This document shows, piece by piece, positions 1-25,899 of a stretch of DNA of 64,000 nucleotides. A model generated the notes under the pieces. It ran no database searches. It had not been told where the DNA came from and saw only the letters and a list, made by a program, of their open reading frames with translations. The stretch is from contig NW_026889803.1 of the NCBI RefSeq assembly GCF_033153115.1, positions 13,702,001 through 13,766,000 on the forward strand, read 5' to 3'. The number at the start of each line of letters is the position of its first letter. The first letter of the stretch is position 1. Made by a program: the position numbers and the translations under genes. The stretch is from Saccostrea echinata. Its lineage: Eukaryota.

Positions 1-235
1 CCACAGATTCTTCTACAGTTGGCTCTCGTCTTTGAGAATGTTTCAAAATTTGATCTCGAATGTCTGTAAGGCACCCACTGTCGTGGGAAGTAATGGAGGC
101 TCCAAGGCCAGCGTCAGAATCAAATCTCTCTTCAGACTTCAGTTTGTCCAGTCTTCCATCAGATGGTCCAAATTTATGGAAGTTTTCAGGCATAGGTGCT
201 GCACAGCAGTCTTCTTCTAGGTCGTTCATATCCAT
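1..235 (-). CDS. Probable IkappaB/cactus-like NF-kappaB inhibitor, N-terminal coding portion (gene continues beyond the left edge)
   Basis: Reverse-strand ORF from aaacATG at 235 stays open to the edge: MDMNDLEEDCCAAPMPENFHKFGPSDGRLDKLKSEERFDSDAGLGASITSHDSGCLTDIRDQILKH... It has an acidic N-terminus, Lys residues upstream of degron-like RFDSDAGLGAS and HDSGCLT, and kappaB sites 125-225 bp upstream. The ankyrin repeats are not visible in the window. Confidence 0.55.
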   Translation of the reverse strand, partial: MDMNDLEEDCCAAPMPENFHKFGPSDGRLDKLKSEERFDSDAGLGASITSHDSGCLTDIRDQILKHSQRREPTVEESV

Positions 236-360
236 GTTTAGATCAGTGCAAAACTGTTTATCACAATCGAGTGTACAAAAATAAAGAATATAATTCAAAT
301 CTCGCAAGTTATGTACCTCTTCAACGGCTAAATTCCCAACGTATACTGTTTTTGTTTCGA

Positions 361-459
361 TGGACTTTCCACCCAACGTAGAAACTGGAAATTTTCAATC
401 TAACAAAGACAACGCACAAAGGGACTTGTACGATAGGGAATTCCCGTTTGGATTTCCCC
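361..459. promoter_or_regulatory. Cluster of NF-kappaB/Rel binding sites upstream of the IkappaB-like gene
   Basis: Perfect palindrome GGGAATTCCC at 436-445, GGGGAAATCC on the - strand at 450-459, and near-consensus TGGACTTTCC at 361-370. Confidence 0.7.
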
Positions 460-2611
460 TAGATATGACCTAGATATTTGCAGCGGCGGTTGTCGGCAGT
501 CATACAGCGTATCGAACTTTAACATATGGTTATTTTATCAAAATAGACTTTTTCCTGATGAATGTATTTTAGTTATTCACAAAATTTAAAAAAAAAATAT
601 AAGTATTATTGTGACCGGTAATTTTTACTTCCGCACAAACTAAAAAAGTAATGGAATTTATATATGATTAATATTAATCGTAAGAAATTTTTTTCCCTTC
701 ATGAATTTCAAAATTGCTTCGTTTAATATTGCATTGATGAGGATATCCATTGCCAACACCTTAATTATTTGTTTTGTACCTGTATATTTATAGCACGTGG
801 GCGAAATCGTTTACTACACATTGTATGTATATAAGTAATACAATAATCCGATGATCAATATACCTACGTACGTCAGCTTTTTAAATATACCTATATGGCC
901 TGTTCTTTTGATATACATTATGTAAGTTCTTATGTAGGATCTGATTTCATCATGTTCATTACAGGAAACCATATAAGGCAAAGAACCTGAAAAAATATTA
1001 GATATTAATTTTTGTACTTTCTCAACTATATAAAGATTATGTCAAATATTTCTACAAATATCCTCGTTAACGATGGAATTTCAATATTTCACGACAACCT
1101 AGATAAGAGGTGCGATCCCTGCTTCCATATGGCCTCGCCGGTTGAAATTTATTTATTTATTTATTTATTTAATTTATCTATTTATTTGTTTTCTCTTGAT
1201 GTTTAAAAATTCTCATTTTAAAATAAAGTGATTAAAAACGTCAAAGAACTGCTATTATTCAATGTTTATACACTTTTAAAATAATTATATTATCTTAAAA
1301 CTTGAATCCAAAACAAGTATTCAATATAATATGATGTACCTACTAGTATGTATTATATGTATCTATATATAAATGATATAAAAATGTTAATCTATAAAGT
1401 TTTGCTTTTAAAAAGTTTTTGTTTTGAAGTATTTATCACAAAGTGGAACTTTTAAAAATCAAATCAAATAAATGAATAAATGAAGACACCCCCCCTCCCC
1501 CGATTTTGCATGATATAAAAATTCGCTGACAAAATTTTCTACTAAAGATGAAGATACATTTGCACTCTGTCAACGTTTTAAACTCTTTGTACTTCGTATA
1601 CCGTACGTGTTCCCCATCTCGTTATTGTTTAATACAAATAGAGATTTCAGTTTTATTTATTAACCTTGAAATTAAGGAGGGGCACGCCCCTAACGAATGG
1701 GTTTAGTTAAGAGTAAGGTGCATCTTCTATCGATCCTGTGCGATTAGCCGTGCCTGTATTTAATGAATATTTATAACTCACTTGTTTACACAAGGGTATT
1801 TCCATTCAAACTGGAAAAAAAACAAACACTACCACTAAGTTAACAAACAGGAAACGAGAGATATAATTCACCAGTAAGGGAGGGTGTGGTCTATTATGAA
1901 AGCACCCATTTACGGCCATGATAAAAAAAATTCCTTGATTTTCATTCATTTTTTTAAATTGTAGCAGGCGGGAGGCGGGCGGGGATGGAATCTTGGAATT
2001 TTTATGCGCAATAATTTAGAATATCGATAATTTATTTGAAGAGATCTTTAACTGAATTGTCAGTGGTGTATTTTCCTTTCTGTACATGTGTAGGCTAATG
2101 ATAAATCGAAACACTTCACCAGAGACGTGACATGCTAGATTGGGAGTAGGCACCTCCTCCAGTTGGAAGGGGGGGGGGTTACCTTGGAGAGAAAAAAAAT
2201 GGAGAAAATAAATACAAAATCATGCGAGTTTATAACATGAAAATAAAAGAAAAATTGTTTTGGAGATTGATGTAAAATGTATATATTCTTGTCTAAGTAA
2301 CACAAGAAAAACTCTTAAACGTTCGTGTTTCTTTTCATCGATAGAAATTGTTTGCACACTTGAAAAACATCCATGATTATTTTGTAGTGGACTGTATAAT
2401 GGGGACTTACAATGCCTCAACGTCCCGTTACCCCTCACTAGTAAGATAGCTTAAATTCAGAAAACTCGATCCTCAATTTCAGATAGTATATCTAGACAAT
2501 ATATAAGCTGTGGCGAGCCTGAAGAGCCCTAGCTTGGATGGATGATCGCTTCATAATACAAACACATATTTAGTAACTAGAAATATAGTATCGTCATGAC
2601 TACTTACCGTA

Positions 2612-2713
2612 TAGTCCAAAACATCTGACGTTTTCCAGGCTTTTTCACGATTTTGATATTTTACGTGCCAAAATCGTGAAAAAAGCCTGGAAAACGTCAG
2701 ATATTTCGGACTA
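2612..2713. mobile_element. ~100-bp hairpin MITE with a 9-bp TSD (Mutator-like)
   Basis: Inverted arms TAGTCCAAAACATCTGACGTTTTCCAGGC... and ...GCCTGGAAAACGTCAGATATTTCGGACTA, with CTTACCGTA at 2603-2611 and 2714-2722. Confidence 0.7.
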
Positions 2714-24542: not shown

Positions 24543-25348
24543 GGCTTTGGAATATCTGCATATAAACAGATTTTTCATTCAGCATTGTCTTTGTTTTATA
24601 CATATTTATGTAGACCTTAAAAACTTTGTTTGCTCCCAGTAACCAGACTGACCACTTCATTAACCCCTAGTGATTTTTTTTATCTACTAAAGCTGGGAAT
24701 AAATTTGTCTTCATTCAATTTTTTTTTTTTGAATAAAGATATCAAGTAAATGATAAACCTTCATAAAATTATAATATGGAACAAGTGCAATGCCATTTAA
24801 TATTGCCTTTATTATTGTTGACCACAAAAACAGATTCTGTAAAACATCTGACACTTTAAAGCTTAAAAAAAAAAGAAGAAAGCATACCTACTGACCTTTT
24901 TTTAATTACAGGAAACAAAATATTTTTTTTTAATGCCCTTTGCATTACTGAATATTTCATTGAATAATATGTGTACATTGCTTGAAAAAATATTGAGATT
25001 TTCATTATTTAAAAACAGAAGAAGTTATACCTTGATAATCTTCAATTTCCATTCACATAATTTCACAAAGCATTTTTATATATAAATTCAAAAAACCCAA
25101 ACTTTTAAACATTAGAACTTTGATAATTTATAAACATTGAAACGCTGAGTTACCAGGAATATGCTAATTGATTCAGAAGCGAGTTTAATGGTCCGAAAAG
25201 CAACATATGCTCGAGTCTTTGGATCAATTACCCTCTGGCCTCAGATATCCTCTAAGTTTTTTCACAGTCCTACCACATTTGCCTTATCCGTGTTAAACTG
25301 AAAATAGCGTGCATGACTTAAATTAAATATGATAGGGTCTTAACATGT

Positions 25349-25617
25349 CAGGGGCTGAAAAATCCTATTGCCCAGGGCTAGTGAATTTTAAGGGTGGGCA
25401 AGTGACTTGAACAAAAATAAAATCCATATGTAAGTCATAGATCTAAAGCTTTGTACAGGGGTTTGCATGATCTACTCAGTATTTGTATTCATATCGTGAT
25501 ATATATAAATATGATAATAGTTTATGGTGGGACAAGCAAATATTAGGTAGGGCAAGTGAATTTTGACCATGCACTTGCCCTTGGACAAGTGCCTAAAAAA
25601 TCTATTTGTCAGCCCTG
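25349..25617. mobile_element. MITE
   Basis: CAGGGGCTGA...TCAGCCCTG termini, CATGT on both flanks, and internal GGGCAAGTG repeats. Confidence 0.6.
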
Positions 25618-25872
25618 CATGTACCGGTACACATTTCATAATACCCCAGTTCTGACCTGCTGTAGCTTCACTTACATATGTTTAACATTTAGATTGCTGT
25701 AAATTATCTCATGAACTGATGAATGCAAGATGCCTTAGTTTAAAACATTTGACCTTGCATAAAACAGATGAATAAAAAAATGCATCCAAAAAATATACAT
25801 ACCGATTAACAGTACATGAAATCATGCAACAGAAGTAAACAATCGCAAATTCAATTCTTTTGACTTTGGTTT

Positions 25873-25899
25873 ACTTTCACATTTCACTGGAAAATCCCC
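25873..25899 (-). promoter_or_regulatory. Adjacent kappaB and IRF-E-like sites in the RIPK/NUDCD1 bidirectional promoter
   Basis: The - strand reads GGGGATTTTCC (25899-25889) immediately followed by AGTGAAATGTGAAAGT (25888-25873). A likely kinase 5'UTR donor CG|GTATGT lies at ~25802. Confidence 0.5.

What the first reader, a model, noticed from the sequence alone, without database searches (positions are those of the whole stretch)
1..25899. Co-oriented RIPK kinase, RHIM/death-domain adaptor and IkappaB-like gene: a candidate clustered NF-kappaB/cell-death module
Seen: three - strand genes within 25 kb encode a RIPK-type kinase, a caspase-site/RHIM/DD adaptor and a probable IkappaB. kappaB motifs lie upstream of the IkappaB-like gene (436-459) and the kinase (25889-25899), and IRF-like motifs lie upstream of the kinase and the adaptor. 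Established: RIPK1 and Imd act upstream of IKK and NF-kappaB, and IkappaB is the feedback inhibitor. Inference: this may be a physically linked, co-inducible receptor-proximal signalling unit that carries its own brake. I know of no description of such a cluster but cannot search for one.
Basis: partly seen in the sequence, partly recalled or inferred. Interest (0 to 1): 0.85.

Follow-up and report, generated by a model that had tools for sequence, protein, structure and literature searches.

The report
Split RIPK1 beside an IkappaB gene
In this oyster the immune signalling protein RIPK1 is encoded as two neighbouring genes, a kinase half and a small Imd-like RHIM/death-domain adaptor half. 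They sit just upstream of an NF-kappaB-inducible IkappaB gene, but nothing yet shows that the three genes are regulated together.

Summary
All three minus-strand genes are real. The genome is Saccostrea echinata.

- **IkappaB:** one exon, 344 aa, crossing the left edge of the window. It has ankyrin repeats, a DSGxxT degron-like motif and an acidic tail. A pair of kappaB sites at 436-460, about 200 bp upstream of its ATG, is rarer than chance.
- **Adaptor:** 183/209 aa, annotated in RefSeq as "RIPK1-like". It has a conserved IETD|ARPG site, a canonical RHIM core (IQIGDQNFM) and a death domain whose best solved match is RIPK1.
- **Kinase:** best solved matches are RIPK1, then RIPK3. It has about 11 coding exons from 24542 to 12977. 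The ORF at 12977-13450 is its last exon, and an intronless TFAM-like gene is nested in its last intron. It has no RHIM or death domain.

The kinase gene followed by the adaptor gene reproduces the RIPK1 domain order. Fused RIPK1 is published for zebra mussel and Lingula, so the oyster pair is most simply a gene fission rather than an assembled module.

IkappaB and the adaptor are adjacent in S. cucullata. In Ostrea edulis all three genes lie on one chromosome with nearby accession numbers.

The kappaB site near the kinase and the IRF-like motifs are at chance level. The scan's earlier notes on this same window (s1-817776, s1-817858) raised the adaptor and split-RIPK1 ideas; none concern other DNA.

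The parts
1..235 (-). IkappaB-alpha-like gene, 5' part of a single coding exon. The ATG is at 233-235. The CDS continues left of the window to G000:C54:13701204 (= L001:704-1735, 344 aa).
   Evidence: The ORF is continuous across the window edge. Pfam finds Ank/Ank_2 at 1e-42. It is 89% identical to S. cucullata NF-kappa-B inhibitor alpha-like, and cactus / IkB-epsilon relatives follow. A (D/E)SGxxT motif and an acidic C-tail are conserved among oysters.
436..460 (.). Pair of kappaB sites in the IkappaB promoter: the palindrome GGGAATTCCC (436-445) and GGGGAAATCC on the minus strand (451-460). A third near-consensus site, TGGACTTTCC, lies at 361-370.
   Evidence: A pair like this is found in 2 of 100 simulated 64-kb sequences. 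It lies 200-225 bp upstream of the ATG.
4146..4411 (-). Adaptor exon 4: death domain (stop codon at 4143-4145).
   Evidence: Pfam Death 2e-11. The best solved match of the whole adaptor is the RIPK1 death domain at 3e-10, followed by TRADD at 6e-3. The splice acceptor and phase were read.
5964..6125 (-). Adaptor exon 3: RHIM core IQIGDQNFM followed by a lysine-rich linker.
   Evidence: Splice sites and phase were read. This is the only RHIM-pattern match in the window. BLASTP alignments to fused RIPK1-like proteins start at the RHIM and run through the death domain. The Pfam RHIM model did not report it.
7030..7117 (-). Adaptor exon 2: IETD|ARPG, a caspase-8-type site followed by an A-x-P neo-N-terminus.
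   Evidence: The motif is identical in C. gigas, O. edulis and S. cucullata. A distant relative, P0206, has METD|AQPS.
7586..7618 (-). Adaptor exon 1 of the 183-aa isoform (MEEDVASYQSE). In the 209-aa isoform this exon extends up to about 7678.
   Evidence: The four-exon model reproduces RefSeq protein P0243 (XP_061163416.1) exactly.
8636..8653 (-). Extra 5' coding exon (MTIDKF|gtaagt) of adaptor isoform X1. It places the adaptor promoter above about 8.7 kb.
23032..24542 (-). RIPK-type kinase gene, coding exons 1-5: 24542-24382, 24190-23890, 23700-23487, 23371-23225 and 23129-23032. They encode the kinase domain plus a short helical segment. VAVK, HLDLKADN and DFG motifs are present.
   Evidence: Splice sites and phases were read. 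Solved matches by exon: RIPK1 for exon 2 and RIPK2, MLKL and RIPK3 for exon 3. tblastn of the O. edulis ortholog gives 76-90% identity.
19718..22547 (-). Kinase gene, coding exons 6-10: 22547-21881, about 21767-21562, about 21296-21147, about 20930-20738 and 19803-19718. They encode a conserved non-kinase region with no Pfam domain.
   Evidence: tblastn of O. edulis P0257. Splice phases were read. Pfam finds nothing. The AlphaFold2 model was unusable (pLDDT 40).
12977..13402 (-). Kinase gene, last coding exon: a Ser/Thr-rich tail ending ...KEST, with the stop at 12974-12976. The apparent 'MFQ' start codon is part of the ttccag acceptor.
   Evidence: tblastn to residues 725-835 of the 844-aa O. 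edulis isoform. The acceptor and its phase match the donor at 19718.
15171..16562 (+). Intronless TFAM-like HMG-box gene nested on the opposite strand in the last intron of the kinase gene.
   Evidence: ORF. Pfam HMG_box 3e-13. The best solved match is human TFAM at 4e-13.
25889..25898 (-). Single kappaB consensus match about 1.35 kb upstream of the kinase ATG. Not distinguishable from chance.

Best explanation
The 25-kb stretch of Saccostrea echinata holds, head to tail on the minus strand, a RIPK1 locus that has undergone gene fission, followed by an IkappaB gene.

- **Upstream gene:** encodes an active-looking RIPK1/3-type kinase with a long tail and no RHIM or death domain. A TFAM-like gene is nested in its last intron.
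- **Second gene, 5 kb downstream:** encodes only what the kinase lacks. It is a 183/209-aa Imd-like adaptor with a caspase-8-type site (IETD|ARPG), a canonical RHIM and a RIPK1-type death domain.
- **Third gene, 3.9 kb further downstream:** a single-exon IkappaB whose promoter carries a cluster of kappaB sites.

Inferred mechanism:
1. The adaptor is recruited through its death domain.
2. A caspase-8 homologue trims it, exposing an IAP-binding A-x-P end.
3. It is ubiquitinated and signals through its RHIM and death domain to IKK and Rel/NF-kappaB.
4. NF-kappaB induces the neighbouring IkappaB as a brake.

The kinase-adaptor linkage is a relic of the fission. The IkappaB linkage is conserved synteny of unproven functional meaning.
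For: **Gene models**
- The adaptor exons reproduce RefSeq XP_061163416.1 exactly.
- The kinase exons match the 844-aa O. edulis ortholog with consistent splice phases.

**The two genes are the two halves of RIPK1**
- The full-length ortholog kinase best matches solved RIPK1 (1.2e-38), then RIPK3 (7e-37), RIPK4 and RIPK2.
- The adaptor death domain best matches the RIPK1 death domain (3e-10); the next match is TRADD at 6e-3.
- Both halves align collinearly to the same fused kinase-RHIM-DD protein, P0143: kinase residues 3-302 at 34% identity (6e-51), adaptor residues 60-180 at 34% identity (4e-16).

**They are separate genes**
- Adaptor proteins of 183-209 aa with their own conserved Met are annotated in S. 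echinata, S. cucullata, O. edulis, C. gigas and C. angulata.
- One 183-aa sequence is seen on 262 contigs. The other listed members lie on contigs of about 1-2.4 kb, shorter than the 3.5-kb genomic span of the CDS here, so I take those to be spliced transcripts.
- The kinase isoforms end in their own stop codons.
- Kinase and adaptor are each single-copy in this genome.

**The fused form exists elsewhere**
- RIPK1 with kinase, RHIM and death domain is reported in zebra mussel, Lingula, other spiralians and lancelets.
- The zebra-mussel RIPK1 C-terminus alone activates an NF-kappaB reporter in a RHIM-dependent way (PMC12119088).

**IkappaB**
- See for its identity, and for the promoter kappaB pair.

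**Synteny**
- In S. cucullata the IkappaB is XP_062599793 and the adaptor is XP_062599794/5, on one 192-kb contig.
- In O. edulis the kinase (XP_048756039/40), IkappaB (XP_048756083) and adaptor (XP_048756095) are on one 112-Mb chromosome.
Against: - No phylogeny with RIPK2-4 and arthropod Imd was possible. RIPK1 and RIPK3 score almost equally for the kinase, and RefSeq calls the O. edulis kinase 'RIPK3-like'.
- The Pfam RHIM model and a PDB sequence search did not report the RHIM.
- Fission polarity rests on published fused RIPK1 in other spiralians, not on a tree made here.
- No RNA reads could be laid, so low-level read-through transcripts that join the two genes are not excluded.
- O. edulis accession numbers are near each other but not consecutive, so strict adjacency there is unproven.
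- Caspase cleavage, IAP binding and NF-kappaB activation by the adaptor are inferred, not shown.
Confidence: 0.6

Rival explanations
1. The three genes are kept together by selection as a co-inducible signalling unit of kinase, adaptor and feedback inhibitor, sharing NF-kappaB/IRF control.
For: - All three genes are co-oriented within 25 kb.
- With 4 IkappaB loci in the genome, naive chance adjacency of one to the single RIPK1 locus is about 3e-4.
- IkappaB-adaptor adjacency is kept in S. cucullata, and all three genes are on one O. edulis chromosome with close accessions.
- kappaB consensus sites occur at 436-460, 4733 and 25889.
Against: - The kinase-adaptor linkage needs no selection if they are halves of one ancestral gene.
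- kappaB matches outside the IkappaB promoter, and the IRF-like motifs, are at chance level.
- The naive probability ignores that the window was picked from many.
- The unrelated TFAM-like gene lies inside the cluster.
- No expression data could be obtained.
Confidence: 0.15
2. The kinase is an independent RIPK-family paralogue (RIPK3-like or a protostome RIPK1/2-like kinase). It merely lies next to an Imd/RIPK1-CT-like adaptor, and there was no fission.
For: - RIPK1 and RIPK3 scores are nearly equal (1.2e-38 against 7e-37).
- Exon 3 alone prefers RIPK2.
- RefSeq names an O. edulis isoform 'RIPK3-like'.
- The roughly 550-aa tail has no counterpart in RIPK1.
Against: - The gene order equals the RIPK1 domain order, and both genes are single-copy.
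- Both halves are aligned best, among the fused proteins in hand, by the same protein, P0143.
- The only other genomic matches to the adaptor are two weak death-domain hits, with no RHIM exon beside them, and no second RIPK-like kinase exon was found, so no fused RIPK1 was detected elsewhere in the genome.
Confidence: 0.15
3. The locus is one RIPK1 gene wrongly split by annotation. The real mRNA reads through from the kinase exons into the IETD/RHIM/DD exons.
For: - The two genes are co-oriented with a 4-5-kb gap.
- No reads could be examined.
Against: - Independent RefSeq models in five oyster species give a short adaptor with a conserved start.
- Many contigs carry the complete short ORF. 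Those of about 1-2.4 kb are shorter than its genomic span, so I take them to be spliced transcripts.
- Both kinase isoforms of O. edulis end in stop codons, and the long one ends at the homologous ...EST stop.
Confidence: 0.07

Closest known systems
RIPK1 (vertebrate, and the fused spiralian form such as zebra mussel XP_052232845.1, PMC12119088)
   Same: It has a RIPK1-type kinase, a canonical RHIM tetrad (IQIG) with the downstream N-x-M, a RIPK1-type death domain, and a caspase-8-type site between the kinase and the RHIM. The RIPK1 C-terminus of a bivalve activates NF-kappaB through its RHIM.
   Different: Here the kinase and the RHIM/death-domain part are two separate genes and proteins. The kinase carries a long, oyster-conserved tail without a known domain.
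Drosophila/arthropod Imd
   Same: It is a small kinase-less adaptor with an N-terminal caspase site followed by an A-x-P end (Imd: LEKD|AAPV, from general knowledge), a RHIM-like motif and a C-terminal death domain. The nearest ESM-Atlas clusters are arthropod death-domain proteins of 206-222 aa (a lead only).
   Different: The RHIM is the canonical vertebrate type, not the cryptic Imd type, and the death domain scores best against RIPK1. Orthology to Imd was not tested. The literature states that Imd has not been found in molluscs (PMC9835746).
IkappaB-alpha / Cactus with NF-kappaB autoregulatory promoter
   Same: It has ankyrin repeats, an N-terminal (D/E)SGxxT degron-like motif, an acidic C-tail and kappaB sites just upstream of the gene.
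   Different: It is a single-exon gene and one of at least four IkappaB loci in this genome. The second phospho-acceptor is Thr in Saccostrea and Crassostrea and Lys in O. edulis.

Membership tests
RIPK family kinase | TKL-type Ser/Thr kinase domain closest to RIPK1-4, with catalytic Lys, HxD and DFG motifs | tested here: met
   Pfam kinase models hit the exons. The top solved matches are RIPK1, RIPK3, RIPK4 and RIPK2. VAVK, HLDLKADN and DFG motifs were read.
RIPK1 (as defined in PMC12119088: N-terminal kinase plus C-terminal RHIM tetrad and death domain in one protein) | Kinase, RHIM and death domain on one polypeptide | tested here: not met
   The kinase protein (O. edulis ortholog, 844 or 700 aa) has no death domain by Pfam. 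The only RHIM-core match in any frame of the window lies in the adaptor exon. The RHIM and death domain are in the next gene, which has its own start codon.
RHIM-containing proteins | Core tetrad [IV]Q[IV]G in the extended RHIM context | tested here: inconclusive
   IQIGDQNFM matches the core tetrad and the flanking N-x-M. It is the only such match in six frames of 64 kb and aligns to the RHIM of fused RIPK1-like proteins. However, Pfam PF12721 and a PDB sequence search reported nothing. The same Pfam model did hit two fused RIPK1 proteins.
Imd-type adaptor | Kinase-less, C-terminal death domain, N-terminal caspase site exposing an A-x-P IAP-binding end | tested here: met
   The architecture and the IETD|ARPG motif are conserved in the S. 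echinata, S. cucullata, O. edulis and C. gigas sequences. The test is at sequence level only.
Imd-type adaptor | Cleavage by a caspase-8/Dredd homologue, IAP-dependent ubiquitination, and orthology to arthropod Imd | not testable with these tools
   This needs biochemistry and a phylogeny that includes arthropod Imd. Only an Atlas lead points that way.
IkappaB | Five to six ankyrin repeats, an N-terminal phospho-degron and a C-terminal acidic/PEST region | tested here: met
   The named homologues are IkB-alpha-like, cactus-like and IkB-epsilon. The degron is a variant (DSGCLT).
Conserved, co-regulated gene cluster | Linkage conserved across distant species | tested here: inconclusive
   The genes are adjacent in S. 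cucullata. In O. edulis they are on the same chromosome with close accessions.
Conserved, co-regulated gene cluster | Shared regulatory motifs beyond chance, and co-expression | tested here: not met
   Only the IkappaB promoter is enriched in kappaB sites. Other kappaB and IRF-like matches are at chance.

The most novel reading that the evidence does not exclude
The oyster locus captures a natural RIPK1-to-Imd transition. Fission of a spiralian RIPK1 produced a free-standing Imd-type adaptor (caspase site, IAP-binding end, RHIM, death domain) and an orphan RIPK kinase. The adaptor stays physically and regulatorily coupled to an adjacent IkappaB, forming a compact activator-brake unit. This would imply that molluscs do have an Imd-like arm, and that arthropod Imd may likewise be a RIPK1 C-terminal half.
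Probability: 0.2. Interest if true: 0.8.

Novelty: new variant of a known kind. Interest (0 to 1): 0.55.

Why it matters
RIPK1 decides between NF-kappaB signalling and cell death. Arthropod Imd is thought to be its kinase-less counterpart.

An animal that encodes the two halves of RIPK1 as separate neighbouring genes is a natural experiment. It shows what the RHIM/death-domain half does without a tethered kinase. It also challenges the published statement that molluscs lack an Imd adaptor (PMC9835746).

The locus gives oyster immunologists three concrete targets:
- an Imd-like adaptor,
- an orphan RIPK kinase,
- a kappaB-driven IkappaB.

These are relevant to work on Vibrio and OsHV-1 disease.

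The cluster idea itself matters less until co-regulation is shown.

Tried and rejected

- AlphaFold2 of the kinase exon-6 region, with a two-sequence alignment, gave pLDDT 40. It was not used for fold search.
- A PDB sequence search with the RHIM exon found nothing, and Pfam RHIM did not fire.
- Paper searches for the C. gigas LOC and XP numbers and their neighbours found nothing useful. A search for co-mention of RIPK and IkappaB in oysters found nothing.
- The eLife paper's supplements held here do not list the spiralian accessions.
- The Atlas search did not reveal which taxon the fused protein P0143 comes from.

- Complex prediction was not sent, because neighbouring genes alone are not reason enough and the report does not claim binding.
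- The spliced models were searched exon by exon, by reference. Full-length comparisons used database proteins returned by the tools (P0243, P0250, P0257).

**Rejected readings**
- The 12977-13450 ORF is not the adaptor's first exon.
- 'MFQ' is not a start codon.

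
Full report
**Origin and layout.** The window is G000:C54:13702001-13766000. A protein encoded in it is identical to RefSeq XP_061163416.1 of Saccostrea echinata, on a contig of the same length as C54. The genome is therefore this rock oyster. There are no N runs. On the minus strand, from right to left, lie a kinase gene, an adaptor gene and an IkappaB gene. An intronless TFAM-like gene lies on the plus strand between the kinase exons.

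**IkappaB.** The ORF at the left edge continues outside the window. From the ATG at 233-235 it gives one exon of 344 aa. It has strong ankyrin-repeat hits (Pfam Ank_2 9e-43) and a DSGCLT degron-like motif. It also has an acidic ...SSEEEEET tail, conserved among oyster orthologs. The nearest named proteins are NF-kappa-B inhibitor alpha-like (S. cucullata 89%, C. virginica 74%, O. edulis 70-73% by BLASTP and by MAFFT). Scallop cactus-like and vertebrate IkB-epsilon proteins follow. The genome holds at least four such single-exon IkappaB loci.

**kappaB and IRF motifs.**
- GGGAATTCCC (436-445) and GGGGAAATCC (minus strand, 451-460) lie 200-225 bp upstream of the IkappaB ATG. A third near-site, TGGACTTTCC, lies at 361-370.
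- A strict site with a second relaxed site within 40 bp arose in only 2 of 100 Markov-simulated windows. This promoter cluster is therefore credible, and it fits the classical NF-kappaB-to-IkappaB feedback.
- Across the window the strict consensus is not enriched (5 against 2.28 +/- 1.69).
- The single site 1.35 kb upstream of the kinase ATG (25889-25898) and the one at 4733 carry no statistical weight.
- GAAANNGAAA occurs 8 times against 7.25 expected. None lies upstream of the kinase.

**Adaptor.** Four coding exons (7618-7586, 7117-7030, 6125-5964, 4411-4146) have canonical splice sites and matching phases. They reproduce the 183-aa RefSeq protein exactly. A 209-aa isoform adds a 5' exon at 8653-8636. 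The protein has three parts:
- **Caspase site.** SEIETD|ARPG is identical in the four species whose sequences I read (S. echinata, S. cucullata, O. edulis, C. gigas). A distant 277-aa relative has METD|AQPS. A fused kinase-RHIM-DD protein has LETD|AV between kinase and RHIM.
- **RHIM.** IQIGDQNFM is the only match to the RHIM core pattern in all six frames of the window. It aligns with the RHIM of fused RIPK1-like proteins. The short Pfam RHIM model did not report it.
- **Death domain.** It hits Pfam Death at 2e-11. Its best solved relative is the RIPK1 death domain at 3e-10; the next is TRADD at 6e-3.

The gene is single-copy here. Orthologs of 183-209 aa are annotated in S. cucullata, O. edulis, C. 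gigas and C. angulata. One 183-aa sequence is seen on 262 contigs. The other listed members lie on contigs of about 1-2.4 kb, shorter than the 3.5-kb genomic span of the CDS, so I take them to be spliced transcripts.

**Kinase.** Splice-site reading and tblastn of the 844-aa O. edulis ortholog give eleven coding exons from 24542 to 12977.
- The 12977-13450 ORF is the last exon. Its 'ATGTTCCAG' is a polypyrimidine/AG acceptor in phase with the donor at 19718. It ends at a stop homologous to the O. edulis ...EEST stop.
- The TFAM-like gene (15171-16562, plus strand; best solved match human TFAM at 4e-13) is therefore nested in the 6.3-kb last intron.
- The kinase domain has intact VAVK, HLD and DFG motifs.
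- The full-length ortholog scores best against solved RIPK1 (1.2e-38), then RIPK3 (7e-37), RIPK4 and RIPK2.
- The roughly 550-aa tail has no Pfam domain, death domain or RHIM. Its structure prediction was unusable.
- The gene is single-copy.

**Split RIPK1.** The kinase gene followed by the RHIM/death-domain gene, co-oriented and 4-5 kb apart, reproduces the RIPK1 domain order. The gap is 4.3 kb to the X1 start at 8653 and 5.4 kb to the X2 start at 7618. Both halves align to the same fused kinase-RHIM-DD proteins recovered with the death-domain search. The clearest case is P0143: kinase 34% identity (6e-51), adaptor RHIM plus death domain 34% identity (4e-16).

A 2025 study defines RIPK1 as kinase plus RHIM tetrad plus death domain. 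It reports such proteins in zebra mussel, Lingula, other spiralians and lancelets. It also shows that the zebra-mussel RIPK1 C-terminus alone activates NF-kappaB in a RHIM-dependent way (PMC12119088). By parsimony the oyster arrangement is a derived fission. The adaptor is a natural 'RIPK1-CT' that looks and probably works like Imd. Another paper states that Imd has not been found in molluscs (PMC9835746). An oyster apoptosis survey only lists 'RIPK1' as annotated (PMC8917759). I found no description of the split or of the linkage to IkappaB.

**Linkage.** In S. cucullata the IkappaB (XP_062599793) and the adaptor (XP_062599794/5) have consecutive accessions on one 192-kb contig. In O. edulis the kinase (XP_048756039/40), IkappaB (XP_048756083) and adaptor (XP_048756095) lie on the same 112-Mb chromosome, with accessions within 56 of each other. 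That pattern is compatible with a shared neighbourhood but does not prove adjacency. Wider synteny, read-through and co-expression therefore remain open. The genes to the right of the cluster (DUF218-like, kinesin-like) gave no sign of an immune role from their ORFs; I did not search them against any library. A further death-domain gene lies about 20-28 kb to the left.

**Verdict.** The best-supported story, however, is a fissioned RIPK1 next to a kappaB-driven IkappaB, not a demonstrated co-inducible three-gene module. The spliced models were searched exon by exon, by reference; the joined step was left out. The scan's earlier notes s1-817776 and s1-817858, both on this same window, gave the adaptor and split-RIPK1 leads that I tested here.

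Noticed in passing
window 15171-16562 (+): An intronless TFAM-like gene of 463 aa (HMG boxes; best solved match human TFAM at 4e-13) is nested antisense in the last intron of the kinase gene. Its lack of introns suggests a retrocopy or a compact ancestral gene.
   Followed up: partly
L004:1083-1412 (-) = G000:C54:13673083-13673412: Another co-oriented death-domain exon (Pfam Death 7e-7, weakly PIDD-like) belongs to a multi-exon gene about 20-28 kb left of the window. The neighbourhood therefore holds a second death-domain gene.
   Followed up: partly
window 22340-22390 (-), kinase exon 6: The stretch TPEVMETEDEGPVQSVLFKK is identical between S. echinata and O. edulis, within an otherwise variable Ser-rich linker. 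It contains an ETED|E caspase-like site just after the kinase domain, reminiscent of caspase-8 cleavage of RIPK1.
   Followed up: no
window 20739-20930 (-), kinase exon 9: An unusual Met/His/Asp-rich low-complexity segment (runs of MMMM, DSDEDDD) is conserved in kind between the two oysters. Its function is unknown.
   Followed up: no
P0168, P0206: Proteins of unknown taxon carry an xETD|A motif upstream of a RHIM and a death domain. The caspase-site/A-x end may therefore be an old feature of invertebrate RIPK1-like proteins, not an oyster novelty.
   Followed up: partly
window 8800-10060: Both strands translate here into Lys/Arg/Glu-rich or Phe/Ser/Leu-rich repeats over about 1.2 kb, which looks like a purine/pyrimidine-rich, low-complexity tract. 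It lies just upstream of the adaptor's first exon and contains the only IRF-like match near that promoter. I did not run a repeat search on it.
   Followed up: no
G000:C15:2990839-2994462: Two tandem single-exon IkappaB paralogues lie here, one with an internal TAA. A further paralogue lies on C8:3695096-3695779.
   Followed up: no
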